Source of the DNA: Octopus bimaculoides
Taxonomy: Eukaryota
Direction of reading: 5' to 3'
Assembly: GCF_001194135.2 (NCBI RefSeq)
Contig: NC_068997.1
Span: 12,395,109-12,459,108 of the forward strand
DNA length: 64,000 nucleotides
The position numbers were made by a program, and so were the translations under genes. Under the pieces are notes generated by a model. It was not told the origin of the DNA. It saw only the letters and a list, made by a program, of their open reading frames with translations, and searched no databases. Positions 1 to 48,933 of the stretch are shown one piece after another. Positions within the stretch are counted from its first letter, which is position 1, and each line of letters starts with the position of its first letter.

Positions 1-503
1 GGATTTGAACTCAGAAAGTAGATGAAAGAGGCTTAATACTGCAAAGATATCCAATCTAATGCTCTGCTAGTTCTGTCAATTCATATGTTTTTTTTTTCTT
101 CTAATAATCATCCAATCATGGACAGTAGTGTTCTGCTCTTTGTTACTGTAATCTTACTCCAGGAAGTTTCTTTTTATGTACAAATGTTCAAATCAAATAT
201 CAAACACATTGATCTCAGCAGTTTTGAAGAACCATTAAAGGTTACAGGCACTATTTTTTCCTTGAATAATAATAATAATAATAATAATGATTTAAAATTT
301 TTCTGCAAGAAGCAGCCAGTTTGGGGGAGGGAATGTGTCGATTACATCGACCCAGTGTTCAACTGGTACTCAATTTATCGACCCCGAAAGGATGAAAGGC
401 AAAGTCGAGCTCGGCAGAATTTGAACTCAGAATATGGCAGCTGACAAAATACTGCTAAGCATTTTGCCCAATGTGCTAACAATTCTGCCAGCTCGCTGCC
501 TTA

Positions 504-609: not shown

Positions 610-1162
610 GCTTGAAATTTTGGTACAAGACCAGCAATTTTAAGGGAAGGTGTAAGCCAATTACATCAATCCCAATATTCAACTGGTATTTATTTTATCG
701 ATATAAACCCACAAAATAATAATAATAATAAAAATAAAAAAAGAATTTTTAAATATATCCAGCAATACAGAATACTTGCAGTTAGATCATTTCGTTATTT
801 CACATTAACAACTCATCAAATGAATGAAACTGGCTGTTTTTCCATTCACAGTGTTGTCATCCTCACGTGGCTGAGCTGTTTATTTACTTTTGTAGATGCT
901 GGTATTGGGTTGTTTTTTGAGGCATTTGTCAGTATCTTGATAGACACACCTTTTCTGTCTGCTAAGCATTCAGTTGTGAACCAGGAGAGGTATATGTAGA
1001 ATGATGCAAGCAGTGTTATGTTATTGAACTCAGAGAGGTTTAGAGATGAATATCTGTAACGGTCAAGTTTGAACCAGTCAGCAGTTTAACCTCACAGTTA
1101 ATATGCTGCAGCATTCTGATCAAAAAATGGAAAACAAATTCTGAAACAGTGAAAAAAAAGTC

Positions 1163-4100
1163 TCATATACCATCCTGAAATGATATTTCTTCTATGTCTT
1201 CATCATCCCAGATTTCTCCTGGACTCGGAATCGTTACCGGTATTCTATGAGGTATAAGTGGAGGTCGTGGCAGACTCTGAGCGTCTTTTATGTCATCGCC
1301 ATCACCAAGCAGCGTATTATGAACATCTGACTCTACAGACGCATCAACATATTGGCTTTCATTGTATAAAGCATTGTCAGAAACAACAGGATCAATCCCT
1401 CTGTATTGGCTGAAACGAACAGATTTGGACCCAATCAGATCAGTGGGTTGCATAAAACTCTGTTGTGAAGGCAACAGGTAACCAGCAGTTGTGATAGGAG
1501 CCTTTGGTTGAAATGACCCATTCTGCAACAAATTTGGTACCACAGGAGTTTGGTCTTGTTGGATTTCCAATCCTAATTCTGCCGTAGCATCTTCATCAGG
1601 GGTCAACCCAACAAAGATCACTCGAGAATTTGTTTTGCTTTTATCACTAGAATATATATGCGATTGTCTAGAAGAAGATTGCTGAGGTAAAACTGTTTTA
1701 GCCATTTTATTGGAATTGTCAGGCTTCACGTTTGTTGAGGCTGCTGCAGCATAATCAGAAGATGTCTCGAAAGTGGCTTGACCAATTTCTGAACTGGACA
1801 ATGCCCATTCTCCGGGACTTCTTTGACCCTCTGCATTAGCATCAGTATTGCCTGGGATCATTTCAGGACTGTGAGGTGGATTCAAAGGGGTCTTCCTCAT
1901 CTTCAAAATGAGTTGTAAGAGTGGATCTTTCTCAGGTGGAACTCGCTGCTGGAGAACAAATTCTCCATCGCTGTAAGTGATATCAGCTGTGTCATCACGA
2001 GTTAACTCGTTTGAGTCCTTCAATGTGCTGGGGTTGCTGACATCAGCAAGAATACGTTTGTAGACACCATCACTGACCATATACAGCGCTGCTTGTCCTT
2101 CACTCTGACTCAGCAGCCACTGGCCATCAGAGAGACTCTCAAGTGCAGTATTGCTACTACTGCTCCCTGATGACAGTGACTCACTGCTCACCTTGTCAGA
2201 TAAAGGTGAAGAATCAGTTGCAACCTCATTGTCTGTTCCAAGAATTTCTTCTACATCGTTGTCATTGTCAGCATCAAATTTAGGCGCCAAATTTAGTCCT
2301 TCAAGTGAAGCAACTGTGAAATTTTCTCCAAGCTCTTTTACTTGTTCGTCAGTAATTTTCTCAGGGGAATCAGGGTTCTCAGGTGAGAAGAGAGATCTGC
2401 TGGGGCCTTTTCCTGCCCCAGAAGTTTGGAAGTGAGCAATAGAAGATGGAGGTGGGGTTGTTGTGTGTGAAGATGAAAATTGCAATGACGATGTTGTTTG
2501 TGATGTTGTTGATGTTGTTCTGTGAGGCTTCGGAGGTTGTAGTAGTAATTGTGATGCTGGTTGTTGTGGTGGTGGAGGTGATGGTGATGACTGTGATGGT
2601 AGAAACTGCGTCGGTGATTGCGATGGAGGAAATTGTGACGGTAATGATGGCGTTATAAATTGATCTTTCTCTTCGGTGTTTGTTTCGTTCAAAGATTTCG
2701 AAGTTATTTCGACCAATTTAACGTGTCTAACAGGAGACCGGACACGAGTGTCTGGCGGAATATAGATAGATTCCATTTTGTCAATCCGCAATTTAGCAAG
2801 AGTTGCTTCCCTTCTTCTCCTTTGTACCTCTTCGACACGTTCTGCCTCAGACTGCCGTCTTGTAATACTACCCAAAACGTTTACGGCATCTTGTGCCACG
2901 ACACTTATACAGCGTTGCATTGCTGGTGCATTTGTGTCTTGTAATTTACTTGTTGATGGTTGCATTACAAAACTACTGAACGGTTGTACAGGGCTTTTTG
3001 AACTTTGCATTGAGACTGCATTTGTATCTTGCACTGCACCATCATCAGAGTGGGTTATTACAGAAATGTTAATAGGCTGCACTATATTTCCAGTTGAGTC
3101 TTTTGCTGCGTCTTTGTTAGAATCTTTGGCAAAATTTGGATGATAACTTTTCATTGGAACTTCATCTGGATTTTCACCAGTTGTAGTTTCTTGTACATCA
3201 GTTTTCTCTCCTTGTTCTACAGAATTTTTATTTAAATTTAATAAATTGATTTCATTAGCGGAGTAGCTTGCAGCTTCATTTATTAATAAGTTGCTACCAT
3301 CTTCATTTATCATGGTTTCAGACTCCTGAGGAATGGCAGTGTCTACAAGAACTGATTCTTTGATAGAAGTAGGCTGCAGAGGCTGAGAAATAACTGCACT
3401 TCCAGGCGTTTTATCAGTAAAATGTGAATTTTTATCTTCCAAAACTAACTCGTTTAATAATAAACTTGTTTGACAAACTGCATCTTGTTTCAATGAGGAA
3501 AATTCGTTTGGCTTTGTTTGACAAATTTCACCTTTTTCAAATTGATTAGATGAAGTTGGTTTGGGAGATTTGTCTGAAGTCGGTATGCTTAAAGCATAGT
3601 CATTTGCTAAGATTGTGCCAACTTTATCAGCAAGAATTTCCTCAATCAGTTGGGATAGTATCAAAGAATCCTCAGAGACTGAAGCTTTTATTTTAGGGAT
3701 ACATTCTTTGTCACCATTATTTTCTGCTGAAAAGCTCTTCTTCAAATAAGCAACTGCAGAATTAGGTGTTACTTGGTCGCTGGAGATTATCTGTGACAAA
3801 ATTTCTTGTTCCACTAACTGAATAATTTCATTTAGATCTTCTTCTTGTTGAATTGATTCAGCATCAATAGGCATTCTTTGAGATGTTGCTAATGTAGCTG
3901 CTATTTTATGGTTTTTAGTTAATATTAGTTCTGATGTTAAGCCAGTTAATAATTCTAACTGCTGTGGCAACACCCGACTGCTGTTATTATTATCAGCTAA
4001 TGATTCACTGGCTTCTTTGGTTTTAGACTCGACAACAACTACCTCAACATCATTTTCTGCTTCAACAATATCAGAACCATCACTGAATCTCTCACAGGGT

Positions 4101-7100
4101 ATCTCCTCTTCATTATCAGTGCTTTCAGCAATCGTAACCGATTTCTCAAAAGATGTATTCAGAACATTTTTATCTTGACTGTCTGTAGTAAACTTCACAT
4201 TCTTTACAGCCTTGTCTTTGGTCATTTCTCCAACAATATCGACAGATGGTAAGTCCTGCTTACTCAATACGGTTTTCTTTGCAGGTTTTGCTTCATTTAC
4301 AAAAGGAACAGTACAGAGGACAACATTTTCAGCAGGAACAACTTTAGGCTGGTCCTGGGGAGCAACAACTACAGAACTACCAGGCCTCACTGTAACGGCA
4401 TGAGTTAATCCAGAGTCCATTCTAGGCTCTCTTAAGGATACAGCCATATAACCTAAATGGCCTGGTACCAAACTTGAATTCTGTAAATAGTTAGAATTAT
4501 TACTAGGTTTGCTAGCAAAGAAATATTTTTGGTCATCAGCCACGATTCCAGTACCTTTCTCAACAGTTTTCTTTACTTCTTCCACTGTTTGAACTTTGGT
4601 AGATTTCTTTTGTATTCCTTTAACATCCACCATAGCTTTTGGTTGGGTTACTTTTGTCTGTGGTTTATTTCTGATGTGTAAGTAAGGCTCTCGAACAGTA
4701 GTTCTTTTATTTTGGTAAGTCGCTTTACCAAATACTTGCGTAAGATATTCTTGATCTTGGTACATGACATTTATGGCTTTACTTGAACTTTGTGGGGCTT
4801 TTTCTTTTGTTTTAACAATAACTTTTGGTTGTTTCTGTCTGGAACCACTTAAATCTTCAGAGTCTTTTTTCTTCGTTAATTTATTCACTTTGGTAGCAGG
4901 ATTTGAGCAAGAAAGTTTTTTGGAAGTGGCTTCTTCCATTGAGAGTTCTTTCTGAATATCTATCTGCATTTTGGCAATACATTGGTCAACTTTTCGTTTC
5001 ATTTGATAAGTTTGAGATGCAGGGCTGTTTTCATAAAGATTATCCACAATATTATAAACAGCATCCTTCTTGTAATCTCGTTCTAAATTCTTTAAGTTTT
5101 CTTCCAGAAACATCCGACTAGTCTGAGCACGTAAAAGAATTTCTTGCCCAGCAACAAGTTCAGCTGAAGGAGTAATTGGTTTTAGGTCAGCATAAATTTT
5201 ATCTGATGTGAAAAGTTGAGTCTTGAGAGGTGAGTCTAGAAGATATTTCTCGAGTGGAGCTACTGACTGTAAAGAAGTAAACCATTTCTTAGAATTACTA
5301 TTTTGATTTTCAATTCTATTAAACTCCTTTTCATCGTGCTGTAAATCGGGAGAAGAAGAAATAACATAACTAGTGTTCAGAATTGCTGGTGCAGGAGGAG
5401 ACTGTTTCTTAGGAATGCGTTTAGCTTTGGAAGTTTCTCGGACTGCATACGGTTCCTTAGAATAAGGATTAGAGGAAAAAGTTTTAAGGTAAGAGTATTT
5501 CAAAGGGAGCTCTTTAGCAGATTGTTTCTCAGTTACAGATGTTGGTTTCTGTATATTTCTGTTAATTTCTTTAATAACAAGTTTTTCTTCTTCTACATTC
5601 GATTGATATTTCTTGTTTCTATTGGATCTAGAATTCTGGAATTTGGATGTGGAATTCACCGAACTCACAGTTTTGTTTGGTTTCGAAGTAGATTTGCTTT
5701 CCTTGCCATTCACAATGTTTGTCTTTACATTCGATGCCTTATGGGCTGTGCTGAGAGGATTATTTGAATTTACTTTTGGTTTTATGCAAGGAGCAGATGT
5801 ATCTTTAGAATGACTTCTCGATGCACTTTTTGATGACGACTTTTCAATATGATGTTCCTTTTTGGGATTTTTAGCATGTTTATCTTCGGGAGCTACAGAA
5901 AGGGGTTTAGGGAAACTTCTTACATCTTTATCTGTATTAATAGACAAATCTAGTGATTCTAAAGAATCAGGTTCTTTAGACTTTTCAATATCATTTTTTG
6001 AATGTTGCACATTTTGAGATCTGTAATGTAATGGTTCCGTTTTCTCTTCATCCTCATTAATTTTTTGTTGAATATTGTCGGGAACCTGACCAAACATGTT
6101 CTCAAAACTTTTTGCGACATTTAGAAAGTTGGCTTGCATACCAAACATCTGCTGTTGTAAAAGTTCTAAAGAATTCATCCGATCCTTTGTTACTTGGCTA
6201 AGTTGATTCTCCAACTTCTGGAGCTTTCCTTCCTTCTCCATTTCATGTTTCTGTAGAAATATTTGTTGTTCTAAAGAATTCATCTTATCCAATAGAGTCA
6301 TCAACTGAACCTCTAATCTGTTATGTGATGCCAATAAAGGATGAGCTGAAAACGCAGCGGCAGTGGCCGCAGCAACAGTGCTGAGTGTTTTTTGCACTGA
6401 AGCAGTTCCACGACAAGGACAGCAGTCTTCTTGCTCTGGTTTCTTATCTAGATTTGTGCTTTCTTTCTGTCTGACAGCAGAAATTTCATCTTCTCTAACT
6501 GATTTATCTTCCAATTGCTCTACAGCTGCTTCGTCTTCAACAGGGGACGTTTTACCAGCAGAAATATCATTTGGTAAATCCAAATTAATTACTTCTAAAT
6601 CTAACGCATTTGCAAATACTTTTTCAGGAATTTGGTTTTGAGGATCAACGGTGTTTTCCTCTTCTGTATTATAGCAACATTCAGGTTCCACTTCCTCAGT
6701 AAAATGGTTATCAAGCTGATCCAAATTCAAAGCAGGAAGCATTTCCTCTTCAAAATTATGTTGCAATTGTAGCTCAAAACTTTCAGGCTCTTTTGTAATA
6801 ACGGTAATTATTTCAGGTTGTTTGTGTTGCACTGATGGAACAGATATTTCTGGATTATTAACTGAATGGAAGTTTTCTTTGAACACAGAGATATTCTCTA
6901 AACTACCAAGATCAGCAGGCTTTGGGAAAGACGGCGAAATCCGTTTCGAAACTGATTTTCTGAGTGGACTGTGTTTTTCAACAATAACATGCTTTCTCAT
7001 ACCATTACACAGAGAATGACACGAAACTTTACTAGTCGATGTATATGGAACTTTGGTTAAACTTCTGCTAACCTGTGTTATAACTGATTGAGTACCAAGT

Positions 7101-7351
7101 CTTGCAAAAGCTGATTTTGTAGAACGGGACGATGCTGAACTAAGGTCGAAGTTACATCCATTATCATTGCTCAGGAACAAATGTTGTTCCGTACCTTTAT
7201 GGGAATGTCCTTTCGATTTTGGATTCTTTTTGCCAGTTAGTGCCTGAGGTGCATTTTTTGAAGTTTTTTTATTACCATGAGAAGTTCTACCACGAGATTC
7301 TCTAACCACTTGAATGGCTAGCTGACCATGATCAGTTTTAATAGATGGCAT
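1163..7351 (-). CDS. KIAA0586: TALPID3/KIAA0586-like centrosomal/ciliogenesis protein, 2062 aa, single uninterrupted ORF
   Basis: 6189-nt ORF. [23 protein letters not shown] resembles vertebrate [63 protein letters not shown] resembles [39 protein letters not shown]; C-terminal [12 protein letters not shown]-type motifs. Comparison is from recalled human sequence. Confidence 0.85.
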   Translation of the reverse strand: [2062 protein letters not shown]

Positions 7352-9627
7352 CTTGTAAAATTAAGATAGTAATAACAATCTTTTCAAATATATTACTTTT
7401 GTTAATAGGTTTCGGCCATGCTGGAGTGAATACATAAGTCGTATAGAATTATAAAAGAATATGTTTCAAATATTATGTGGAACCCGAATATTTTATTGAT
7501 ACTTTGAATGTTGATGTTTCTTGACGCAGCATAAGTTGTGCATCAAGGATTTCGGCAAAAGGCCGGGGGATTTTCGAAACACAATGGATTTTAGATTAAA
7601 ATGAGTTCCATGCCTACGCTGTGTCAAGGGTTATAAACGAAGAATAAATGAAAAGAAATGATTAAAACCTGTGTTCGAACGAATCCGAGCATCGCAGTTT
7701 CGTAGACGCAATACAGCGCTAGTTAAGATGTAAACATTAACTTTCCACTTATTTGTTTTGTTGTCGTTGGATTCGGTACAAAACGAACAGATTAAAGAAA
7801 AGACGAGATTTAAATCAACTAAATCGCCTCTTCAGTATATTGCTAATAACTTTATTTTAATGGACCGGCAGAAGGATTTGTCCAGAATTACGGAAATATG
7901 AATGTTCCATATTCGTGTGAAAAAAAAAAAACAAAGTTTTCTTCGTATCTTAGGAAGTAAAGAAGAAAAAGACAAAAGGCGGAAATAATTTGGTTTTCAA
8001 GCCTGGAATTATCGAAGAGGCGTTGTTGCCATGAATATTTATACATAAACAAACTTAAAGAATCCAATTCTCGATGAATAACAGAATTTAAGTTCCTGTT
8101 AATTTTTGTTTTTCGTTTTTTTTTAATGCTTTACGGAATATCTTGTTTTCGTTCGTTTTGCTTTTTATAAGAAATTAATAAATTATCAAACATACCATAG
8201 CGATCAATCATTATCCAAAATGTTCAGATAACTGAAATAGGGTGAACTGGAGAGGGTTACAAGTAGTGTAATAGAGCGATGGCATTGTTCTTGGTGTGGT
8301 GGTGTTGATGGTAACGAAGAAAGTTTGGAGACATTTGTAAGAAATAAACCAGGCGTCCTAATTAAAAAAAAAAAGTATCCAAATTTCAAGATTTTTGTTG
8401 AATTACAATAGAGATAGTGGCTGGAAAATAAGCAGTACGATAGAGTTGTTGGAAAATAAATAGATCTATCTATTATTTTGAAAATATATCATGCATGTCT
8501 GCTTGCGATCGTTCTTAAGAAAACCAAAATTCACGTAGCAACCATTGTCTTATTTACTCCCACAACTCGTTACTAGATTCGTGATGGGAACAAAGAAGGG
8601 ATATGTTTTAACTTGTTCAATAGGTGGTGTGCTCGCACTAGTTGATATCATTACTATTAACAATACTATTAATGCTTGTGGAACTGCTGTAGCTAAGGTC
8701 TCTACTTAAATAACAGTAATAGTAGTAGCAGTGGTATTAATAGTATTAGTAGTTGCGGTAACAAACAACAAACTGTTGTGGTTAGTAACCAACAGACTTA
8801 CCTCCATTCCAAGCGCTCCTTTATACACATAAACCAGTTTCTACCCGGCTTTACAAACACAAATTTAGAAATTATCGAATTTTGCCTGCATTGTTTTGTA
8901 ATGTCATGTAATTTATTTGCTCTTGTGGCTTCAGAGCAACAAACATTTTTAAAAGATTCAAGTTAGAGTACATGTCAATATTTTTCAAGTGCATCAGCGG
9001 GCCTTAATTCAACAATTATATTATATCTTATCATAATTATATTAAATTATATTATTATTTATTATTACAATATTATATTATATTTATTATATGATACGAT
9101 ATTTATCTTATTATATTATATTATATTATATTATATTTAAAAACAATTGCTATTTTCCCCTCTAGAATAATAAGCAATAACTATCTATAACATTCTTAAG
9201 AAAACTTTTTTTTATGTTAATTACAGTTAAGTTTCCGTCTTTATTAATACTGAAAGACTATATAAAACGAGAGACAACAAAACGTACAATAAATATCGCT
9301 TACAACCTTGAAAAATAAGTTTATTTGTTTTTTTAAACTTGGTTCGTAAATAATAAGTGGTCATAGCAACGGTCAGTTTCGAAGGTGCAATAATTCTGTC
9401 TATCTATCGGGTTGCGGCCATGCTGTGGCACCGTTTTGTAGGGTTTTTTTTTTTCAGTCGACCGAATTGATTCTAGTACACATTTTTTTAAAGCCTGGTA
9501 CTTATTCTATCGGTCACTTATGCCGAACCGTTAAGTTACGTGGATGTAAGCAAATCAGTGTCGATGATAGGAGGACAAATACAAAGAGCCATACAAAGAC
9601 ATAGATACACACACACAGGCAGATAGA

Positions 9628-9667: not shown

Positions 9668-9897
9668 AAGGCGACGAGCTGGCAGAAACGTTAGCACGCC
9701 CGGCGAAATGCTTATTTAATCTGCCGTTACGTTCTGAGTTCAAATTCCGCCGAGGTCGACTTTGCCTTTCATCCTTTCGGGGTCGATAAATTAAGTACCA
9801 GTTACGCACTGGGTTCGATCTAATCGACTTAATCCCTTTGTCTGTCCTTGTTTGTCCCCTCTATGTTTAGCCCCTTGTGGGCAATAAAGAAATAAGA
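9668..9897 (+). mobile_element. tRNA-derived SINE, family A
   Basis: ggcgacgagctggcagaaacgttagc..gagttcaaattccgccgaggtcgactttgcctttcatcctttcggggtcgataaattaagtaccag. Other copies at ~300-500 (-), ~15080-15260 (-), ~16512-16690, ~29803-29990, 48665-48893 (-). Confidence 0.85.
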
Positions 9898-13430: not shown

Positions 13431-16400
13431 GACCACTCACGACTAGCTAGCGCGGACGCGCGACTGCGCGTTCGGGTCCGCGCTGCTTTAGTAGTACCGA
13501 TTCAAATTCAGAACGTAAAGAACAAACCGTNNNNNNNNNNNNNNNNNNNNNNNNNNNNNNNNNNNNNNNNNNNNNNNNNNNNNNNNNNNNNNNNNNNNNN
13601 NNNNNNNNNNNNNNNNNNNNNNNNNNNNNNNNNNNNNNNNNNNNNNNNNNNNNNNNNNNNNNNNNNNNNNNNNNNNNNNNNNNNNNNNNNNNNNNNNNNN
13701 NNNNNNNNNNNNNNNNNNNNNNNNNNNNNNNNNNNNNNNNNNNNNNNNNNNNNNNNNNNNNNNNNNNNNNNNNNNNNNNNNNNNNNNNNNNNNNNNNNNN
13801 NNNNNNNNNNNNNNNNNNNNNNNNNNNNNNNNNNNNNNNNNNNNNNNNNNNNNNNNNNNNNNNNNNNNNNNNNNNNNNNNNNNNNNNNNNNCTAACCCTA
13901 ACCCTATCCCTAACCCTAACCCTAACCCTGTCCCTAACCCTAACCCTAACCCTATCCCTAACCCGCGTGTGCAAATGAATACGCGTTTAGGGTTAGGGTT
14001 AAGGTTAGGATCGACCACTCACGACTAGCTAGCGCGGACGCGCGACTGCGCGTTCGGGTCCGCGCTGCTTTAGTAGTACCGATTCAAATTCAGAACGTAA
14101 AGAACAAACCGTTAACTAAATGCCTCAAGGCATTTTTTTGTCCGATATTCCAACGATTATGTCAACCTCCGCGCTTTGTATTGTATTTTAATGAGAATAT
14201 TATGTTATATAAATGAAGTATACTGAAATAGAACTCAGACTAATAACACACTCATCCACCCACACCTAAAACTGCTTTTAATAACATTACTACTTAATGT
14301 TGGTTATTAAGTATCACATCGTGTTTTTAAGAATAATTCATCTAATACACCGATGATATTCAGGAATCCTGTGCAAGAGGAACAAATTTTCCTTAGCACC
14401 GTTAGAAATCAGAGAGAATTGCCGAAACTAAAAAAAGTTATTTAATCACGTGTTAGGTTGTATCACAGCTTTCTCCTCTAGACAGTGTTGTTGTGTCAGG
14501 GAAAGGTTATATTGATGTTACTAAAGAACTTTGACTAAGAGTCTACGTGAACAGCTACAGAGGAGAAAACTCACTACAAATCTGACCTTAACATTTACAA
14601 GACAGAGAACGGTGTTTTTCTATGTAATGTCCCACAATTATGTTTGGCCCATAAGTATCACCAATTCGTTGATTAAATTTTTGCTTTTTGTTTTAGCTTT
14701 GAGATTTGAATTTAAATACGATTCGAAATAAAATAAATATCTACATATACATTGGAAATAGGTATATAGTAACACAAAAAAATATGCACTATTGTCTAAC
14801 ACAAAAATATCTCTGTTCCCGCTGTGGGTAGGTATGCTTTACAGGTAGGGAGGAGGAGGAGCAGTACTTTTGCATACCTTTCTAGACTAATAAGCTAAGA
14901 GAGAGAGTGAGACGGTGGAGAGACAAAGAAAAAGAGAGAGGGGAGTCTTGCTTCAGATTCATTTTTGTTATCTTCGGCTTCTACGCTCCTTCAAGCGAGC
15001 TGGTGTGATGTGACCTTTGTATTTCATTAATCTAGGTAAAGGGAGTTGGAGCCATGATTAATATACAGTAGCTGATTATAGATTTAAAATTTCAGCACAA
15101 AGCCAGCAATTTGTGCTCAACTGGTACTTATTTTATCGACCCCGAAAGGATGAAAGGCGAAGTCGACCTCGGCGGAATTTGAGCTCAAAACTTAAAGACT
15201 GGCGAAATGCCGCTAAGCTTTTTTGCCCAGCGTACTAAGGATTCTGTCAGCTCGCTGCTTTTACAGTAACTGATTATAAACAATTTATCGTTCCTGTAAA
15301 AATAGGCTTTGTACTTTAAGCGTCCTTAAACGTAACATATTTCCAACACGCGTGTATAAATAGTCGCTCTGTTTAACCCTCACACCCTATACTATGTCTT
15401 GGATAAGAAAAGGGTACATTAAATTATGAAACGAGACCAGCATAATGATGACTACATTGGTCAGTTCGATCAAGATTAATTTAAAACTAAACAGTACTAG
15501 GAGTTCTAGTGAAGTTTACGAGTGAACCTATCTATTTATAAGACGAAACGGTCATAGAACGTCTTTAATTTATAGTTTTGCTTGATCTGAGCTGACCTGA
15601 CCTTGGAGCTATAACGTTATCAATGACTCATATTGCACGGTTAACAATTGCATGTCATGTGCGGCGTCGTCCTCGACTTGACATATATGTAGTCTCGCCT
15701 GCTGACCTACAGAACCAAACAATATTATTAGCAACATTAGCTGCTAATAAAAAAATAAATGTAAGTTCCTGATCTGGATTTGTTTTGGAGATGATTTAAA
15801 TACGAGACCGTGTGATGCAGCTAAAATAATTTTCATCGCAGTGGAAAATATAATTATAAACATCAAGTCACACATACAAACAAACTTACCTACACACACT
15901 ATCTCTCTACTCTGGCTTTATTATAGTTTATAACAATTTCCTACATAGACCCGAGATTAGAAATGTCTTTAGTAATTTTTATCGGACTGTATTTTACAGG
16001 TTTAAACGTGTTTTAGTTTTAGATACATTCCTAACGCTTTTTAAGTCATGGTACTTTAGGGACGTTTTTGTCCCAACATTCCATTGCCTGTCACCTAAAA
16101 ACCTCACTTCGCCCTTTCACGTTTTTGTTGATTCAACGGAGGCGTGATTTATCCATTTATTCCGTTCTAATACTTGGACTGACACTTTATTTTATCGAAC
16201 CAGAAATATGAGATGAAAAGCAAAGTTGACATTGGTGGAAAACGATCTCAGAACGCGAAGAGCCGGAACAATTACAGCAAAGTTTGTCATCCGATGCATT
16301 CACGGATTCTCTCCCATTTCTGATATCTCAACGCCGCATATTCTGGTGGATGGGTTTAGTCTTAAGTTTATATATTTGTTTTGCAAGATTCTTATTGTGA

Positions 16401-17817
16401 AATCGTGTGTTGAAACATTGTTTATACTTGGGGACGACCATCCCCAGGTTTAGTCTTAATTTCCATTACAATTCTATTCATGTCAGCGGTTTATACCATT
16501 TAGTATAAGTAAGGCGGCGAGCTGGCAGAATCGTTAGCGCGGTCGGCAAAAATGCTTAACGACATTTCTCTTTACGTTCTGAGTTCAAATTCCGCCGAGG
16601 TCGACTTTACCTTTTATCCTTTCAGGGTCGATTAAATATGTACCATTTAAGCTGTAGAGTCGCCTAGTTCTCTCTGCTCCGAAATTTCAGATCTGATACC
16701 TATAATACAAAAGACTATTAAGAACCAGTGTTTCATTAACAGATCGTTGATATTTGTATGCTAAAAATTCTGTTGCTCTCGACCGATCAAACCTGCGAGC
16801 AAAGATATTTTAAGTGGGACCATCCTGTCTCTTAACCAAGCACAGTGCTCCAACGTGTCCTCTAAATGATTTCAGAGATATGACTGCTATTTCTAACAGA
16901 TCAGAAACCACATCGATGTTCCCTTACTGTCTCGTGGCTAATGTTATATAATATAGTAGCAGTTGTCGATTAACCCACACAACGAGTATTTCTTCTCTCC
17001 ATCTGTCTACGTCATCCAACTCTTTTTCCCTCCGTCTGTCTATCTCTATGGTGATAGCAGCTACTGCCGCTAGGTTGCACATGTATCCATACGTGTGATA
17101 CGGGTGAAGAACGGGTATGTATGGTGGAGTCAGCCGTTCACGAAGTCACGTACTTTGTAGCATGAAAATTCATAATCCCGTGACTTCGGTACACACACAT
17201 CCTTCTCTCTTACTCTCTCTCTCGCTATTTTTATAATGAGAAAACACACAAATACTCGCTGCAACAGGAACAAACGAACGGCTGTTCTTGTTAGAGAGAT
17301 GTCAACATCAAGTTATTTTTAATAAAGCTACAAACAAACCAGCGTGGGAAAATATACGCGGTCACTGCATGTGCTAAAAACAGCAGCCGTATCTTTGCCT
17401 TCTGTTCTTAATTATTCTCACAAATGGTAATTGCCAACACAGAACCCTTTCTTGCCGATAGCTGGGTTTGTTAAAAATAGCAGTCAAATCCCATCCCCGC
17501 AAAGGAAGGACACATTGTACAGTGTTGTCAGTCATGGAGTGCATTGTCTTAATAAAATATGGGATGGGCACCGGTGAAATTCCTTTGATTAGGGTTAAAC
17601 AGAAGAACGAAAAATTAAAAAAAAAGCTTTAGCACATGGTTACACGTTTAGGTAGTTTTGTTTAGCCCTAGGTCAACCGTGACTGAACAGACCTCTGTTC
17701 AAGAGTATTTTAGCCATACTCATCCCGTTTTTCTTTCTTTTTGTATATATGCAAAAGGGCCTCAGGGCAACATTATCCAACGTGTTTCAAGACAGCAGAT
17801 CGAGCAATCATGTAGAT

Positions 17818-20135: not shown

Positions 20136-21526
20136 ATACATATATATATTTATATACACATACATACATATATATAGATATATTTATATACATCTCGAAA
20201 TGGGTAGTGAATGTAGACAGCCGACAACTGATTCAAGGTCAGTCTTTGTATTACCTGTCCTTTTTTTTCTCGTTATTTGCGTATTTAATGTTGGTGACGT
20301 TCTGAACATATCGTTTTACGTCCGCTTTCTATGCTGGCATGGGTTGGACGGTTTGACTGAGGACTGGTGAGCCAATCTGATCTGGCAAAGTTTCTACAGC
20401 TGGATGCCCTTCCTAACGCAATATATATATATGTATATACATGTGCATTATTTTTAATTATTATATATAAACATTATTAATTATAAGGAATATTATGGAG
20501 TTGCCCAGCATTATATTTAATTCTTTTACTATATATACTTCTTTACATAGACCTACACATGTTTCAGCTGCACCGATTAATAACTGTTGCAATCGCAACC
20601 CCACTATGTGTGTGTGTTTGTTTGTTTATGTCTAGTAATTTAATGGTTTGGAGAAGGAGATAGATAGAATAAGTTCTGGATTTCTAAAAGAAGGCAAGTA
20701 CTGAGTTTGATTGGTTGACTGGTCCTTTCGTGGTGGTGTCTCAGCATGGCTGCAGTCCAATGATTGAAACAAGTAAACAATAATGAATGTAATGAGTGAC
20801 TGAATTAATAAAATTCTTGAGAAACTGTTTTGTGGCTTTAGCTACATTGCGAAGTTTGACTGCTTTAAATGTACATGGCTTAGTGGTTAAAGCTTTCAGC
20901 TCACAATACTGATGTCATGGGTTCAATCCCTAGGCCAGTTGTTGCATTGTGTCTTTGAGCAAAGCACTTCATTTCGCATTGCATCAGTCCACTCAGCTGT
21001 AAAGAAAGTACCAGTGCAGCCCTCTCTACCTTTGGTGGTTATGTTCAAGATGTTATTTGGGTCAAGGATGCTGGAGACAGAGAGGATATCCATGTCTGCT
21101 CAGGTACCTAAAACAACTAACAAGGATATGGTACATGCTACTAAACCATACTTGCTCACAAGTGAAGACTAGCTGTAATGAACTAAGCTCAAATTCCACC
21201 TTGCTGATCTCTATCAACACCAGGGTAATGCGAGTCTAAGTTCTAGTCTAACCCTTTAGCCCTTAAATTATTCTGTCGAATGTAAAGATTATTTATTCAC
21301 ATTGTTTTCTATTAATCATGTGTTATCTTGTAAGAGATGAGATTTCAATGATGTGATTGTTTATTTTCTGAATGGCATTGTAGAGTAGATGTAAAAGGCA
21401 CAAAAACAATTTTTTCTGAATGTACATTGCTGAAATCTAGCTGCATCTTTTATGCCATCAAATATGGTAAAAAAATAAAGAACCCTTTTCCAAATATATT
21501 CTAAAATGTTAAATATTTCTTCCATC

Positions 21527-22100
21527 ACATGCCAGTGGGAAAAATTAGTAGTAGTTGATAGCTTCCGTTACCTAGGTGATCAAGTCAGAAGCTGGGGTGG
21601 ATGCACTGAGAGAATAGCTGCTAGAATAAGAATAGGCTGGGCAAAGTTCAGGGAGCTCCTACTTCTGCTGGTAACAAAGGACCCCTCGCTCAGAGTGGAA
21701 AGCAGACTGTATGATTCCTGTGTGTGAACACCCATGCTACACAGCAGTGAAACATGGACTGTGACTACTGAGGATATGCATGGGCTTGTAAGAAATGAAG
21801 CTAGTAATGCTTTGCTGGATGTGCAAGGTCAGTGTGCATGCGTCGAGAGAGTAAGGTTGGGCATAAGAAGCATCAGATGTGGTGTGCAAGAGAGACGACT
21901 GTGCTGTTATGGTCATGTGATGCATATGGATGAGAACAGTTGTGTGAAGTGTCGCACTCTAATGGTGAAGGGAACCTGTTGAAGAGGTAGACCCAGGAAG
22001 ACATGAAACAAGGTGGTGAAGCTTGATCTTCAAATGTTGGCCTTCGTGGAGGCAATGACAAGTGACCAACACCTTTGGCAATATGCCATGCTTGAGAAGA
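21527..22100 (+). mobile_element. 5'-truncated, degenerate RTE-clade LINE 3' end
   Basis: EKLVVVDSFRYLGDQV..RIRIGWAKFRELL..MLHSSETW..RRLCCYGHVMHM..RGRPRKT, the post-RT C-terminal region of RTE elements, with stops and frameshifts. Confidence 0.85.
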
Positions 22101-28405: not shown

Positions 28406-28569
28406 TTAAAATGCAAAAAGAATAAGGAAAGCCATCATCAAACAAAAGAGACCCATGGCTTCTGACAGAGCAAATCCCAAAATGGCATATGAAAACAGCT
28501 GTTGTTTCAGAGATGGATTTCTGGCATAACCAATTACTAAGTTTCCGAATACACTTCCAATACCAGCAC
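28406..28569 (-). CDS. ATP5MC: ATP synthase F0 subunit c, last coding exon ([53 protein letters not shown])
   Basis: Near-invariant subunit c sequence; acceptor ttcattgtag, phase 1; TAA at 28408-28406. Confidence 0.98.
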
Positions 28570-28812
28570 CTACAATGAAAAAAGGGGTTTTTCTTTTAAA
28601 TTAATCTAACAGTATAAACAATTTAAATCCCTAATAGTCAACCCCCTAGAAAGTTTACAGGGAAAATTCTTAACACCCATATCTACATAATGTTTGGAGT
28701 TCATATACACCTCATGAAAAAAGCCCGATGAAAACAGACTAATTTTTGGCTATCTAATTAAAATGAGTTTAAAGAGATGGGGACTAGATAGATGGTAATT
28801 TAATTCACTGAC

Positions 28813-28909
28813 CTGAACCTGCAGCACCGACTGTAGCTGCTCCAGCACCAATGTATTTTGCTGCCTGATCAATATCGTTTCGTACAGAGCTGGTCTGGAA
28901 AAATCGTAC
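28813..28909 (-). CDS. ATP5MC: ATP synthase subunit c exon (VRFFQTSSVRN-DIDQAAKYIGAGAATVGAAGSG), includes mature N-terminus
   Basis: Classic RxFQTS presequence cleavage region then DID.AAK.IGAGAATVG; caacag acceptor, gtcagt donor; 97 nt, phase 0 to 1. Confidence 0.97.
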
Positions 28910-29500: not shown

Positions 29501-30240
29501 TGTCAGCGCCATGTAGAATGCATTCACACCAGTGCTGTGTAAATGCAGCCAGCACACACTAAAGTGGTTGTGAGGAAGGAACCATGCCACTACAGACAAT
29601 TTGGAGTCTGAATGGCAACTGTCAAGCCGTGCAACCGATGCCAGCATGGAAAACATGTTAAACAATGATGAATACATTGCTAAAATCTATGTGATGTACA
29701 ACTTAACATTTACTGAATTAATATCTACACTTAAGACCAACAGGCTATTTGATCAGAGTATGTTAAAGTATAAAGGTTTAGGTCAAGTCCAAGGGTGATG
29801 AAAGGCGGCGAGCTGCCAGAAACACTTAGTAGTACTTCGTCTGTCTTTACGTCTCGAGTTCAAATTCCGATGAGGTCGATTTTGCCTTTTGGGAGGTCAA
29901 TAAATTCAGTACCAGTTGCATACTGGGGTTGATTTAATTGACTGGCCCCTTTCACCAAAATTTCGGGCTTTGTGTCAAGAGTAGAAAATACAAGGGAGAT
30001 GAACAGATTTAATTTTGATTTCTAACTCAATTTGCGCTTTGACCTCAAGTGTGTAAACATCAAATATGAATGGGGGTGGGTGGTGAAATCTATTCATAAC
30101 ATTGACAAAGGTGCATTAGACCACTTGTAAAGAACCATCTTCTCTAAGATATTCCTGGGCACTGTAACATTGGTTATTCAAAATCAAATTTTAGTGGGTA
30201 ACAAAAAACTCGCCAAAACAAAAGTTTTAATAAAGCTTAC

Positions 30241-35047: not shown

Positions 35048-35871
35048 NNNNNNNNNNNNNNNNNNNNNNNNNNNNNNNNNNNNNNNNNNNNNNNNNNNNN
35101 NNNNNNNNNNNNNNNNNNNNNNNNNNNNNNNNNNNNNNNNNNNNNNNNNNNNNNNNNNNNNNNNNNNNNNNNNNNNNNNNNNNNNNNNNNNNNNNNNNNN
35201 NNNNNNNNNNNNNNNNNNNNNNNNNNNNNNNNNNNNNNNNNNNNNNNNNNNNNNNNNNNNNNNNNNNNNNNNNNNNNNNNNNNNNNNNNNNNNNNNNNNN
35301 NNNNNNNNNNNNNNNNNNNNNNNNNNNNNNNNNNNNNNNNNNNNNNNNNNNNNNNNNNNNNNNNNNNNNNNNNNNNNNNNNNNNNNNNNNNNNNNNNNNN
35401 NNNNNNNNNNNNNNNNNNNNNNNNNNNNNNNNNNNNNNNNNNNNNNNNNNNNNNNNNNNNNNNNNNNNNNNNNNNNNNNNNNNNNNNNNNNNNNNNNNNN
35501 NNNNNNNNNNNNNNNNNNNNNNNNNNNNNNNNNNNNNNNNNNNNNNNNNNNNNNNNNNNNNNNNNNNNNNNNNNNNNNNNNNNNNNNNNNNNNNNNNNNN
35601 NNNNNNNNNNNNNNNNNNNNNNNNNNNNNNNNNNNNNNNNNNNNNNNNNNNNNNNNNNNNNNNNNNNNNNNNNNNNNNNNNNNNNNNNNNNNNNNNNNNN
35701 NNNNNNNNNNNNNNNNNNNNNNNNNNNNNNNNNNNNNNNNNNNNNNNNNNNNNNNNNNNNNNNNNNNNNNNNNNNNNNNNNNNNNNNNNNNNNNNNNNNN
35801 NNNNNNNNNNNNNNNNNNNNNNNNNNNNNNNNNNNNNNNNNNNNNNNNNNNNNNNNNNNNNNNNNNNNNNN

Positions 35872-39073: not shown

Positions 39074-39823
39074 ATGTTCAGGTGCAATAAAGACTGTAAA
39101 CAAACAGGAAACAACTTCTATCCCATTCCAGGGTGAAAAACTAGAGGTAGTCGATAGCTTCCGCTANNNNNNNNNNNNNNNNNNNNNNNNNNNNNNNNNN
39201 NNNNNNNNNNNNNNNNNNNNNNNNNNNNNNNNNNNNNNNNNNNNNNNNNNNNNNNNNNNNNNNNNNNNNNNNNNNNNNNNNNNNNNNNNNNNNNNNNNNN
39301 NNNNNNNNNNNNNNNNNNNNNNNNNNNNNNNNNNNNNNNNNNNNNNNNNNNNNNNNNNNNNNNNNNNNNNNNNNNNNNNNNNNNNNNNNNNNNNNNNNNN
39401 NNNNNNNNNNNNNNNNNNNNNNNNNNNNNNNNNNNNNNNNNNNNNNNNNNNNNNNNNNNNNNNNNNNNNNNNNNNNNNNNNNNNNNNNNNNNNNNNNNNN
39501 NNNNNNNNNNNNNNNNNNNNNNNNNNNNNNNNNNNNNNNNNNNNNNNNNNNNNNNNNNNNNNNNNNNNNNNNNNNNNNNNNNNNNNNNNNNNNNNNNNNN
39601 NNNNNNNNNNNNNNNNNNNNNNNNNNNNNNNNNNNNNNNNNNNNNNNNNNNNNNNNNNNNNNNNNNNNNNNNNNNNNNNNNNNNNNNNNNNNNNNNNNNN
39701 NNNNNNNNNNNNNNNNNNNNNNNNNNNNNNNNNNNNNNNNNNNNNNNNNNNNNNNNNNNNNNNNNNNNNNNNNNNNNNNNNNNNNNNNNNNNNNNNNNNN
39801 NNNNNNNNNNNNNNNNNNNNNNN

Positions 39824-41136: not shown

Positions 41137-43645
41137 TCATCATCATTTAACGTCTGCTTTCCATTCTGGCATGGGTTGGACATCATCATCATCATCATCA
41201 TCGTTTAACGTCCGCTTTCCATTCTGGCATGGGTTAGACAGTATGACTGAAAACTGGTAAGCCAGGGAGCTGCACCATGTTCCGATCTGATTTGGCAAGG
41301 TTTCTGTGGCTGGATACTCTTCCTAATGCCAACCACTCTGAGACTGTAGTGGATGTTTTTTACGTATGTAAATATACACACACACATACATGTATGTGTG
41401 TCTGTCTATCTATCTATCTGTCTATTTATATATAAAAAGCCACATCAGATGCCATGATGGAACTAAGGTGTAGGTACAGGAGGTGGTCAGATTCTTCATA
41501 AGGAATAGACAACTACCATATATATAAATGCACACACACACCCACATACAGTTTCCATCTATATATATACATAACATTGTATGTATGTATGTCTATACCT
41601 ATGCATATTTGTATGTATGTATGTATATTTATGCATAAATATACATAACAACAGATGGTTTGAGGTTCACTACAGCTGTTTCAGACATGTTATCTTGTGC
41701 CTACAGTGGACCGTACACATTGGTAGTGCACAAGTGCGCTATTCCCCACTCTACCTTGGTGCCTTTATTATTCAAATACCTTGATTCTCTCAGATCCTGA
41801 AAATTTTATGATATAAGTATATATATTGGTGGCACGTAAAAAGCACCATTGGAGCATGGTCGATGCCAGTGCCGCCTGATTGGCTCCTGTGCTCGTGGCA
41901 CGTAAAAAGCACCATTCGAGCGTGGTTGATGCCAGTGCCACCTGACTGGCCCCCATGCTGTTAGCATGTAAAAAGTGCCCACTACACTCTTGGGGTGGTT
42001 GGCATTAGGAAGGGCATCCAGCTGTAGAAACCTTGCCAGATCAGATTGGAGCCTGGTGCAGCCTCCTGGCTTGCCAGTCCTCAGTTAAACTGTCCAACCC
42101 ATGCCAGCATGGAAAGTGGGTGTTAAACGATGATGATGATGATGATGACGATGAGAAAAGGAGAGAGAGCGACAGAGGTGTTCTTTCATCAAAGTTTAAG
42201 CCCTCTCTTGTTCACAATGCTGAAATGTTCCACAGTTTGAATTCTTTCACATTTTGCATCTATTTTCATCTTTCTCTGGCAAACTACTGAAATGAAATAG
42301 CGACTGGAAGGTACTAAAGGGATGAGCAACAGGTTTTGAGCTCATACAACTTTTTAATATCAGTTCATTTTATCAGGCTTGAAACGTGTAGCCTCAATGG
42401 TAGCTATATTTTACTGCATCTCTTGAATTATTAAGTTGTGGTGGTCATATAATACGCTATCTATGCAGTTGCTATTTATACTCTTATAACATTTATGAAA
42501 CTGATAACTGTTGAAAATGGCCTTTGCTCCTCATCAGGCATCTCGTTTCTGAATGTCAGAGTGCCAAAAATGCCATTGAACTAACAACCCTTATTTCACA
42601 ACTAAGGGCCATTTGGTGGCTGTTGGGGTTAGGGGTATTTTTTAGAGTGTTAATCTATTAAAGTGGTTATTTTTTTTTTATATTGTCTGTAAAGGAGGGC
42701 TATGTAGTTAACCTGATCTCAAGCCGAGTTTTGTGTCCAATGAAGGAGACGACGTTGACATGGGTGCCAGTCGTCTAATTTAGTTCGATTTCGATATACA
42801 TATATATATATATATTTAAAAAAATAACATCGACCACTAATGTGGACAATTAATGCGCTAGAAATAGATCACATCTTGTGTCTATTAAGACCTAAAAAGT
42901 TCTCAACATGAAATATAGCAGCATACCAAAAACGTGAGCGGGCAAGACATTTAAAATCACCTAAAAAAATCATTATTAAACAGGAACCAGGTTTCGGATT
43001 TAACAAATTCTTACCATTTGTCTATTCCTCATCAGCCTGATTTGTAATGTAACAGCAATTATCAGAATTGTATACATAGTTGCCCACCGCCATGGGTGCG
43101 CGTGCATATGGTTCTGCTAATTACAGCTTAATGGTAAAATTCAAAAGTCTTCGTTTTGGCTCGCTAATTTCAGGAATATATCCGCAGAAATATATATGTG
43201 CTTCTAAATTAAGTTAATTTTTTNNNNNNNNNNNNNNNNNNNNNNNNNNNNNNNNNNNNNNNNNNNNNNNNNNNNNNNNNNNNNNNNNNNNNNNNNNNNN
43301 NNNNNNNNNNNNNNNNNNNNNNNNNNNNNNNNNNNNNNNNNNNNNNNNNNNNNNNNNNNNNNNNNNNNNNNNNNNNNNNNNNNNNNNNNNNNNNNNNNNN
43401 NNNNNNNNNNNNNNNNNNNNNNNNNNNNNNNNNNNNNNNNNNNNNNNNNNNNNNNNNNNNNNNNNNNNNNNNNNNNNNNNNNNNNNNNNNNNNNNNNNNN
43501 NNNNNNNNNNNNNNNNNNNNNNNNNNNNNNNNNNNNNNNNNNNNNNNNNNNNNNNNNNNNNNNNNNNNNNNNNNNNNNNNNNNNNNNNNNNNNNNNNNNN
43601 NNNNNNNNNNNNNNNNNNNNNNNNNNNNNNNNNNNNNNNNNNNNN

Positions 43646-48140: not shown

Positions 48141-48933
48141 GTTAGTTAAAATTCTGTTCTCTAACCCGATAGCATTGTAATTATCCTGTCAAATGTCATG
48201 TCTATTTAGTCACATTGTTTCCAATTAATCACGCTTTATCTCATAGCTTTGAGATTTTTGAGGATGTAATTGTCTATTTTTAGATTGGCATTGTAGGATA
48301 AGTGTGGGAGGCTGGATACGACTTGACAGGGCCAAGAAAACTCAAAATCACGTGATCTAGTGGTCTTGGTGGTGGTGATTTATCTGCCCACTAGTGATGT
48401 AAACAAGAATGCATTTTGCACCAAAAGCTAATAGGAGAGTATCTCTCGTGGTATTTATTGCAGTATAGTTTGTTCCAACAGAACATCCATGTTTAAGTGA
48501 GGATAAATATTACTTCTCGGTAGTAATACCGCCTCTGTCGCCAATAAATATACTTTAACAAGCACTCTGTAAAGTGGTTGGTGTTAAGAATGGTATCCAG
48601 TCATAGAAACCATTCCAAAGCAGGCGGAGGCTTGTGCAGTCTTTTGACTTGCCAACTCTTATTTCTTTGTTGCTCATAACGGGCTAAACATAGAGGGGAC
48701 AAATAAGGACAGACAAAGGGATTAAGTCGATTACATCAACCCCTGTGCGTAACTGGTACTTAATTTATTGACCCTGAAACGATGAAAGGCAAAGTCGACC
48801 GCGGTGGAATTTGAACTCAGAACATAATGGCAGATGAAATACCGCTAAGCATTTCGCCTGGCATGCTAACGTTTCTGCCAGCCCACCGCCTTCTTGTCAA
48901 CTCTTGTCAAACCAACCCAAGGGGGATGGACTT

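What the first reader, a model, noticed from the sequence alone, without database searches (positions are those of the whole stretch)
1163..7351. TALPID3-like gene with its whole 2062-aa ORF in one exon: possible retrogene or wholesale intron loss
Seen: no intron in 6.2 kb of coding sequence, while both neighbouring genes are conventionally spliced. Known: vertebrate KIAA0586/TALPID3 has about 30 exons. Inference: an old retrocopy that replaced or supplements the spliced parent, or mass cDNA-mediated intron loss. The frame is intact across all recognisable conserved blocks, so it is probably functional. No poly(A) tail or TSD is recognisable, so any retroposition is old.
Basis: partly seen in the sequence, partly recalled or inferred. 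Interest (0 to 1): 0.7.

Follow-up and report, generated by a model that had tools for sequence, protein, structure and literature searches.

The report
Intronless TALPID3 gene in octopus and cuttlefish
Octopus and cuttlefish encode the cilium-building protein TALPID3 in one uninterrupted exon, whereas other animals split it into about 26 exons, so the gene was most likely re-made from its own mRNA in an early cephalopod ancestor; this is a new example of a known process.

Summary
Window 1163-7351 (-) is one 2062-codon ORF in Octopus bimaculoides (chance about 1e-57). It matches only Pfam TALPID3 (E=1.8e-35), and its best non-cephalopod relatives are annotated TALPID3.

The intronless state is not specific to this octopus. 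O. sinensis has the same structure, and the cuttlefish Acanthosepion pharaonis genome carries an uninterrupted 1840-codon orthologue.

Outside cephalopods the gene is intron-rich:
- Scallop: at least 21 coding exons.
- Lymnaea: 25.
- Annelid Owenia: 27.
- Crinoid Antedon: 26.
- Mytilus: gene range of 170 kb.

Twenty-five intron positions are shared by at least two of these species. Nineteen are shared between the echinoderm and a protostome. All lie inside the unbroken coleoid ORFs, so the introns are ancestral and were all lost before octopus and cuttlefish split.

The ancestral gene also hosts a nested IRF2BP gene in one homologous intron and is linked to TIMM9. Neither gene is present in the octopus or cuttlefish flanks I could read.

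dN/dS is 0.36 (octopus pair) and 0.28 (cuttlefish pair). No second cephalopod copy was found.

Best reading: an old retrogene that replaced its parent (about 0.6). In-situ cDNA-mediated intron loss is not excluded. This is a new member of a known kind, of moderate interest.

The parts
1163..7351 (-). Complete single-exon CDS of the TALPID3/KIAA0586 orthologue (2062 aa plus stop at 1163-1165)
   Evidence: ORF listing. Pfam TALPID3 E=1.8e-35. Identical to the annotated 2062-aa product of O. bimaculoides GCA_001194135.2, chromosome CM046617.1. Colinear with the cuttlefish orthologue to the C-terminus.
7361..7363 (-). In-frame TAA three codons upstream of the start ATG. The sequence ttaattttacaag|ATG just before the start also resembles a splice acceptor, so a non-coding 5' exon is possible but unproven.
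   Evidence: Sequence read; stop-free stretch 1166-7360. No RNA data could be obtained.
3722..6547 (-). Region matched by the Pfam TALPID3 profile (aa 269-1210)
   Evidence: profile positions 26-875 of 1261.
4970..5149 (-). Counterpart (aa 735-794) of the coiled-coil segment that is essential for centrosomal localisation and function in vertebrates
   Evidence: BLASTP alignment to horse TALPID3 residues 513-572. The essential coiled coil is at human residues 531-571 according to PMC4641851.
4232..4768 (-). Most conserved core (aa 862-1040; motifs '[13 protein letters not shown]..PYLH', 'REPRMDSGL', 'LPSVDI'). In other animals four or five ancestral introns interrupt it.
   Evidence: Alignments A1 and A2. 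Intron map (positions near aa 854, 912, 959, 1032).
1178..2185 (-). Conserved C-terminal block (aa 1723-2058), shared with the cuttlefish protein up to the terminal acidic 'EEISF' motif
   Evidence: 32% identity over 350 aa, E=8e-33. One search shows the cuttlefish stop context.
879..884 (-). First AATAAA downstream of the stop codon; a tentative polyadenylation signal giving a 3' UTR of about 280 nt
   Evidence: Read from the sequence only. No transcript data.

Best explanation
The ORF is the functional, and apparently the only, TALPID3/KIAA0586 orthologue of Octopus bimaculoides. TALPID3 is a distal-centriole protein needed for ciliogenesis. Its single-exon structure is shared with cuttlefish, so it dates from before the octopus-cuttlefish split. 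The most likely origin is retrogene replacement (an 'orphan retrogene'). A full-length spliced TALPID3 mRNA was reverse-transcribed and inserted at a new locus in a cephalopod ancestor. The copy acquired a promoter and took over the function, and the intron-rich parent was then lost. That parent would have carried a nested IRF2BP gene in one intron and sat next to TIMM9. Shown here: the ORF, its orthology, complete absence of at least 25 ancestral introns, the shared state in two coleoid superorders, purifying selection, absence of IRF2BP and TIMM9 from the available flanks, and no second copy in protein databases. Inferred: the RNA intermediate, the relocation, and the loss of the parent.
For: The ORF is intact and matches Pfam TALPID3. 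The window is O. bimaculoides chromosome CM046617.1. O. sinensis has the same uninterrupted structure apart from one frameshift. The A. pharaonis genome has a 1840-codon ORF, L004:6734-12253, matching the 1824-aa cuttlefish protein in one HSP. Outgroups are intron-rich: scallop at least 21 exons over 39 kb, Lymnaea 25 over 23 kb, Owenia 27 over 60 kb, Antedon 26 over 64 kb, and a Mytilus gene range of 169.5 kb. Twenty-five intron positions are shared by at least two outgroups, 19 of them between the echinoderm and a protostome, and all lie inside the coleoid ORFs. IRF2BP is nested in the homologous intron (octopus aa about 629) in Antedon and Owenia, and is also nested in Mytilus. TIMM9 lies head-to-head with TALPID3 in Antedon, and Timm9-Talpid3/Irf2bpl linkage is reported in vertebrates (PMC4236578). 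None of these partners occurs in 56.6 kb upstream or 11 kb downstream of the octopus gene, or in the cuttlefish flanks. An in-situ wipe-out of all introns would have deleted the nested IRF2BP. dN/dS is 0.36 for the octopus pair and 0.28 for the cuttlefish pair, and below 0.65 in every sub-window. Only two cephalopod clusters (octopods, decapodiforms) appear among all TALPID3 relatives in 1.84 billion representatives. The coleoid proteins evolve faster: 25-30% identity to other molluscs, against 35-48% among non-cephalopods.
Against: No poly(A) remnant or target-site duplication is visible; both would be expected to have decayed after more than 250 million years. Relocation is not proven. TIMM9 adjacency is already absent in Owenia, which keeps its introns. 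Cephalopod genomes are known to be heavily rearranged. I could not fetch the octopus IRF2BP or TIMM9 loci. A full-length retrocopy of 6-7 kb is unusually long for LINE-mediated retroposition. No Nautilus data and no RNA-seq could be obtained. Absence of a parent copy rests on protein and transcript collections, not on a whole-genome tBLASTn.
Confidence: 0.6

Rival explanations
1. In-situ wholesale intron loss. A full-length cDNA recombined with the ancestral locus (gene conversion or double-strand-break repair) and erased all CDS introns at once. The gene never moved, and later rearrangements separated it from TIMM9.
For: The end product would be the same: every CDS intron missing. TIMM9 linkage is also lost in Owenia without any intron loss, so missing neighbours are weak evidence for a move. 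No retroposition hallmarks are present.
Against: It would have deleted the nested IRF2BP gene together with its host intron. Documented RT-mediated intron loss in animals is usually partial and biased towards the 3' end, not 25 or more introns across 6 kb. No ancestral neighbour is seen within 56 kb upstream.
Confidence: 0.27
2. Gradual, one-by-one loss of each intron in the cephalopod lineage.
For: Only the long time available on the cephalopod stem. No direct evidence from any call.
Against: All of at least 25 ancestral positions are empty in both coleoid lineages, with no straggler. Neighbouring octopus genes keep their introns. Bivalves, gastropods, an annelid and a crinoid retained nearly all positions over a longer time.
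Confidence: 0.06
3. Artefact: cDNA contamination or mis-assembly produced an intronless copy in the assembly.
For: None found.
Against: The same structure, embedded in non-coding flanks, occurs in independent assemblies: O. bimaculoides, O. sinensis and A. pharaonis, plus 7.7-7.8 kb Logan contigs from at least three further cuttlefish runs that are colinear with the genome.
Confidence: 0.01
4. TALPID3 was ancestrally intron-poor, and introns were gained in the other lineages.
For: None.
Against: Nineteen intron positions coincide between an echinoderm and protostomes, including positions shared by all four mapped species (octopus aa 704, 775, 800, 854, 1032, 1179, 1207).
Confidence: 0.01

Closest known systems
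TALPID3 / KIAA0586 (Pfam PF15324), the distal-centriole ciliogenesis protein mutated in the talpid3 chicken and in Joubert syndrome 23
   Same: The Pfam match is well above threshold. Colinear blocks include the counterpart of the essential coiled coil and the 'YGK..Y....R.T...PYL' core. The best non-cephalopod relatives are annotated TALPID3. Function as described in PMC3897186 and PMC4641851.
   Different: The CDS has no intron, against 26-27 coding exons in Antedon and Owenia and a multi-exon gene in vertebrates. The protein is longer (2062 aa) and much more diverged than those of other molluscs. The gene is detached from TIMM9 and IRF2BP.
'Orphan' retrogenes / retrogene replacement (for example human orphan retrogenes, PMC3548309; amphioxus SYCP1, PMC5803294)
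   Same: A single-copy, intronless, selectively constrained gene whose orthologues elsewhere are multi-exonic, with no surviving parent.
   Different: The CDS is very long (6.2 kb) for a retrogene. The event is old enough that poly(A) and target-site duplications are gone. Relocation is inferred from missing ancestral neighbours rather than shown directly.
Reverse-transcriptase-mediated intron loss by homologous recombination with cDNA
   Same: RNA-templated removal of introns with precise exon junctions and an intact reading frame.
   Different: That mechanism typically removes a few adjacent introns, mostly at the 3' end, and leaves the gene in place. Here every CDS intron is gone, along with the nested gene in one of them, and the ancestral neighbours are not nearby.

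Membership tests
TALPID3/KIAA0586 protein family | Match to Pfam PF15324 above the gathering score | tested here: met
   122.6 bits against a cutoff of 27, E=1.8e-35, aa 269-1210.
TALPID3/KIAA0586 protein family | Reciprocal similarity: the best relatives outside the clade are TALPID3 and nothing else | tested here: met
   All 63 hits in 1.84 billion representatives align to the same core. Every named hit that has a functional name is TALPID3/KIAA0586 (Ptychodera, Mizuhopecten, Mytilus, Acipenser, mammals); the rest are labelled uncharacterised.
TALPID3/KIAA0586 protein family | Conserved coiled coil required for centrosomal localisation (human residues 531-571) | tested here: met
   Octopus aa 735-794 aligns with horse 513-572 ('LEENL...AVY...LY'). 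Region defined in PMC4641851. This shows sequence conservation only.
TALPID3/KIAA0586 protein family | Localisation to distal centrioles and requirement for ciliogenesis | not testable with these tools
   Needs cell biology or knock-outs.
Retrogene (processed retrocopy) | Lacks all introns of the parental gene, with exact exon-exon junctions | tested here: met
   All 25 shared ancestral intron positions fall inside uninterrupted octopus and cuttlefish ORFs.
Retrogene (processed retrocopy) | Lies at a locus different from the parent (ancestral synteny lost) | tested here: inconclusive
   No TIMM9 or IRF2BP in 56.6 kb upstream or 11 kb downstream in octopus, nor in the cuttlefish flanks. The new neighbours are ATP synthase c and a JAZF1-like gene. 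However, TIMM9 linkage is not universal, and the octopus IRF2BP and TIMM9 loci could not be fetched.
Retrogene (processed retrocopy) | 3' poly(A) tract and flanking target-site duplications | tested here: not met
   None seen in the 1.1 kb downstream. SINE insertions and (ATT)n microsatellites occupy the 3' flank. Decay is expected for an event older than the coleoid split, so this lowers membership certainty only slightly.
Orphan retrogene / retrogene replacement | No surviving intron-containing parent in the same genome | tested here: inconclusive
   There is one octopod and one decapodiform cluster among all relatives, and no second O. sinensis, O. bimaculoides or O. vulgaris protein. A whole-genome tBLASTn was not possible.
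Orphan retrogene / retrogene replacement | Functional: open frame kept and purifying selection | tested here: met
   dN/dS is 0.36 (O. bimaculoides vs O. sinensis) and 0.28 (two cuttlefish). The ORF has stayed open in both lineages since their split.
Orphan retrogene / retrogene replacement | Transcribed | not testable with these tools
The Logan cuttlefish contigs could be either RNA or DNA.
In-situ RT-mediated intron loss | Gene stays in its ancestral neighbourhood, and loss is usually partial | tested here: not met
   The ancestral partners are absent from the reachable flanks, and the loss is total, including the intron that hosts IRF2BP. The range examined was limited.

The most novel reading that the evidence does not exclude
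TALPID3 could be one visible case of a wave of retrogene replacements of long, essential, intron-rich genes in the coleoid stem lineage, tied to the burst of retroelement activity and genome reorganisation in that lineage. If so, a 'ghost' parental locus should still be recognisable in coleoids, with IRF2BP, perhaps next to TIMM9, surrounded by decayed TALPID3 exons.
Probability: 0.12. Interest if true: 0.65.

Novelty: new member of a known kind. Interest (0 to 1): 0.4.

Why it matters
This is a clean and unusually large (6.2-kb CDS) example of an essential centriole and cilium gene that lost all of its 25 or more ancient introns in one lineage and still stayed functional. It provides a rare genomic character uniting octopods and decapodiforms, which could be scored in Nautilus to date the event. 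It also exposes a bilaterian micro-synteny, with IRF2BP nested in a specific TALPID3 intron and TIMM9 alongside, against which the coleoid state can be tested. In practice, the single exon makes the cephalopod gene easy to clone and to edit. It does not reveal a new mechanism.

Tried and rejected
Transcription, the TSS and a possible 5'-UTR intron therefore remain untested.
- Two profile searches with the search for homologous proteins returned almost nothing useful. The whole-protein alignment A1 was swamped by low-complexity words. The core alignment A2 returned only short anonymous fragments.
- Look-ups of non-longest isoforms (Mytilus X2 and the Mizuhopecten GenBank model) found nothing. 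The longest isoforms worked.
- DNA for the Mytilus gene was not delivered because its range exceeds 100 kb.
- Comparing octopus and cuttlefish flanks by tblastx and blastn gave no shared element, so common insertion-site flanks could not be shown.
- Longer cuttlefish Logan contigs (7.7-7.8 kb) are fully colinear with the A. pharaonis genome and end in simple repeats. They may be genomic, so they say nothing about UTR splicing.
- Pfam found nothing in the LINE-like ORF pieces at 21.5-22.0 kb, and gave only a borderline hit for the JAZF1-like finger.
- Micro-synteny among lophotrochozoan outgroups is only partly conserved. Owenia has AP-sigma and POLR1C-like genes upstream, and Lymnaea has an ATG8-family gene downstream.
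- The scallop '121-aa upstream gene' is a tandem-repeat artefact.
- No Nautilus sequence could be identified among the hits.
- Literature searches found no report of intronless cephalopod TALPID3.
Full report
**Observation.** The window carries a single ATG-to-stop ORF of 2062 codons at 1163..7351 on the minus strand. An in-frame TAA lies three codons upstream of the ATG. No other non-repetitive stop-free stretch in the 64 kb exceeds 177 codons. With the window's composition (P(stop)=0.067), a 2065-codon open stretch has a chance probability of about 1e-57. The exact protein is on record as a product of Octopus bimaculoides assembly GCA_001194135.2, chromosome CM046617.1, near 12.39 Mb, with no other called gene within 10 kb.

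**Identity.** Pfam gives one family, TALPID3 (PF15324), E=1.8e-35, covering aa 269-1210. There is no PDB relative by sequence.
- BLASTP against horse TALPID3 aligns octopus aa 266-413 with horse 157-295, and aa 735-1253 with horse 513-1051.
- The second block includes the counterpart of the coiled coil that is essential for centrosomal localisation and function in vertebrates (human residues 531-571; PMC4641851).
- A full HMMER scan of 1.84 billion representative proteins with aa 260-1260 found 63 relatives. Those with a functional name are TALPID3/KIAA0586 from a hemichordate, bivalves, fishes and mammals. The crinoid, annelid, chiton, nemertean and two gastropod hits are labelled uncharacterised or hypothetical.
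TALPID3 forms a ring at the distal end of centrioles and is required for ciliary vesicle formation and cilium assembly (PMC3897186, listed). I infer the same function here from orthology; it is not shown.

**Is the single exon real, and how widespread is it?**
- O. sinensis has the orthologue (90% identity) in one open frame apart from one frameshift near codons 41-63. That frameshift explains its shorter 1946-aa annotation.
- O. vulgaris has a 2067-aa protein in the same cluster.
- The closest non-octopod relative (P0003, 1824 aa, 37% identity) belongs to a cluster named TALPID3 of the cuttlefish Acanthosepion (Sepia) pharaonis.
- In the A. pharaonis genome (L004) the whole 1824-aa protein aligns in one tblastn HSP in one frame. 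L004:6734-12253 is an uninterrupted 1840-codon ORF. The deposited annotation there is truncated to 751 aa.
- Logan contigs of 6.6-7.8 kb from four cuttlefish runs are colinear with that genomic locus over their full length.
- The intronless CDS is therefore present in independent assemblies of both coleoid superorders. This excludes an assembly or cDNA artefact and places the origin before the octopus-cuttlefish split, roughly 250-300 million years ago from my own knowledge.

**Outgroups.** I mapped each annotated protein back onto its genomic locus by exact-match chaining.

| Species | Coding exons | Gene span |
|---|---|---|
| Scallop Mizuhopecten yessoensis | at least 21 (model incomplete at the 5' end) | 39 kb |
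| Pond snail Lymnaea stagnalis | 25 (partial) | 23 kb |
| Annelid Owenia fusiformis | 27 | 60 kb |
| Crinoid Antedon mediterranea | 26 | 64 kb |
| Mussel Mytilus trossulus | not mapped (no DNA delivered) | 169.5 kb |

Sources for the loci are.
- Projected onto a 12-sequence alignment, the introns form 49 positional clusters.
- Twenty-five clusters are shared by at least two of the four mapped species. Nineteen are shared by the echinoderm and at least one protostome.
- Seven are shared by all four species, at octopus aa 704, 775, 800, 854, 1032, 1179 and 1207.
- All lie inside the uninterrupted octopus and cuttlefish ORFs. The introns are therefore ancestral to Bilateria, and every one of them is missing in coleoids.

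**Ancestral neighbourhood.** The outgroup loci showed a conserved arrangement that bears on the mechanism.
- In Antedon, a TIMM9-like gene (Pfam zf-Tim10_DDP, E=4e-19) lies head-to-head 1.4 kb upstream of TALPID3. An intronless IRF2BP gene sits inside the 41-kb intron after aa 480.
- In Owenia, an IRF2BP gene sits inside the 37-kb intron after aa 698. That intron falls in the same alignment column as the Antedon one, at octopus aa about 629.
- Mytilus also has IRF2BP nested in TALPID3.
- In vertebrates, Talpid3 and Irf2bpl lie between Timm9 and Dact1 (PMC4236578).
- The ancestral block was therefore TIMM9 | TALPID3 [IRF2BP].
- No TIMM9 or IRF2BP sequence is detectable by tblastn (E up to 1) or motif scan in the octopus window (56.6 kb upstream, 1.1 kb downstream), the further 10 kb downstream (L003), the O. 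sinensis locus, or the cuttlefish flanks.
- The nearest recognisable octopus genes are an ATP synthase subunit c gene (two exons, Pfam ATP-synt_C E=4.8e-11) and a JAZF1-like zinc-finger gene. Both are spliced.

**Function and selection.** Nei-Gojobori dN/dS is 0.36 between O. bimaculoides and O. sinensis (dS 0.12). It is 0.28 between two cuttlefish. It ranges from 0.13 to 0.64 in sub-windows. This indicates purifying selection of the moderate strength expected for a largely disordered scaffold protein. Over 655 ungapped columns the coleoid proteins are only 25-30% identical to other molluscs. Bivalves and gastropods are 35-41% identical to an annelid and 36-39% to a hemichordate. The coleoid lineage therefore accelerated, which fits relaxed or adaptive evolution after a change of locus but does not prove it.

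**Mechanism.**
- Simultaneous, precise removal of 25 or more introns over 6 kb points to an RNA intermediate.
- Retroposition to a new locus followed by loss of the parent ('orphan retrogene', PMC3548309; 'retrogene replacement', PMC5803294) explains three things together: the total loss, the absence of the nested IRF2BP and of TIMM9, and the single copy.
- In-situ conversion by a full-length cDNA gives the same CDS. However, it would have deleted IRF2BP with its host intron, and it would be atypically complete.
- I weight retroposition about 0.6, in-situ conversion about 0.27, and gradual loss about 0.06. Artefact and ancestral intron poverty are effectively excluded.
- Against retroposition: there is no poly(A) tract or target-site duplication, which is expected at this age. 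Relocation is not directly shown. TIMM9 linkage is already missing in Owenia.

**Not resolved.**
- Whether a non-coding 5' exon exists. The sequence just before the ATG, ttaattttacaag|ATG, looks like a splice acceptor.
- Whether the gene is transcribed.
- Whether Nautilus has introns.
- Where IRF2BP and TIMM9 lie in octopus.

**Verdict.** The gene is the sole TALPID3 orthologue, intronless since before the coleoid radiation, and most likely a retrogene that replaced its parent. It is a new member of a known kind. It is notable for its CDS length, its age and the essential nature of the gene, but it is not mechanistically new.

Noticed in passing
L011:21526-23436 (Antedon), L007:18879-20510 (Owenia), and the Mytilus locus: An intronless IRF2BP gene is nested, on the same strand, in a TALPID3 intron in a crinoid, an annelid and a mussel. 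The host intron is homologous in Antedon and Owenia. With the vertebrate Talpid3-Irf2bpl linkage, this looks like an ancient bilaterian host-and-nested gene pair.
   Followed up: partly
L011:3158-3645 (minus strand): A TIMM9-like gene lies head-to-head 1.4 kb from TALPID3 in Antedon, the same partner as reported in vertebrates. This suggests a very old, probably bidirectional-promoter pair.
   Followed up: partly
L001:9651-9818 versus 9770 onward (O. sinensis): The O. sinensis orthologue changes frame near codons 41-63 relative to O. bimaculoides, which explains its shorter 1946-aa RefSeq model. It is either an assembly indel or a real N-terminal difference.
   Followed up: no
L004:6734-12253 (A. 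pharaonis): The deposited cuttlefish annotation calls only the last 751 aa, although a 1840-codon open frame covering the whole protein is intact in the genome.
   Followed up: yes
window 300-500, with further copies at 9675-9837, 15113-15258, 16513-16648, 29856-29942, 48717-48890 and 62282-63433: A SINE-like repeat of about 170-200 bp occurs at least 10 times in the window (75-88% identity). The copies just downstream of the TALPID3 stop are flanked by long (ATT)n/(ACT)n microsatellites.
   Followed up: partly
window 13531-13891, 35048-35871, 39167-39823, 43224-43645, 52068-52499, 59276-59292, 61112-61290: These are assembly gaps (runs of N). They generate the spurious multi-frame 'ORFs' listed at these places.
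   Followed up: yes
window 28409-28600 and about 28808-28880 (minus strand): These are two exons of an ATP synthase F0 subunit c gene (Pfam ATP-synt_C E=4.8e-11 for the last exon), separated by an intron of about 200 nt.
   Followed up: partly
window 49115-49459 and 51365-51895 (plus strand): These are exons of a JAZF1/Sfp1-type C2H2 zinc-finger gene ('KPFRCPVPGCKKRYKNINGIKYH', 'YRCHCGKSYKTPQGLRSHNINHHP'), followed by a Q/P/T-rich tail. Pfam support is only borderline (zf-C2H2_aberr, 26.6 bits against a cutoff of 27), so the name is tentative and rests partly on memory.
   Followed up: partly
window 21479-21979 (plus strand): Two adjacent open pieces resemble the C-terminal part of a LINE reverse transcriptase ORF ('...GWAKFRELL...', '...TPMLHSSETW...'). 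There is no Pfam hit, so the call is by eye only.
   Followed up: partly
window 7352-7370 (minus strand): The sequence immediately upstream of the start codon, ttaattttacaag|ATG, resembles a 3' splice acceptor. This hints at a non-coding first exon and a recruited promoter further upstream.
   Followed up: no
L005:8079-8444 (scallop): The annotated 121-aa 'gene' upstream of scallop TALPID3 is a translated tandem repeat (IQYNHH)n and almost certainly not a gene.
   Followed up: yes
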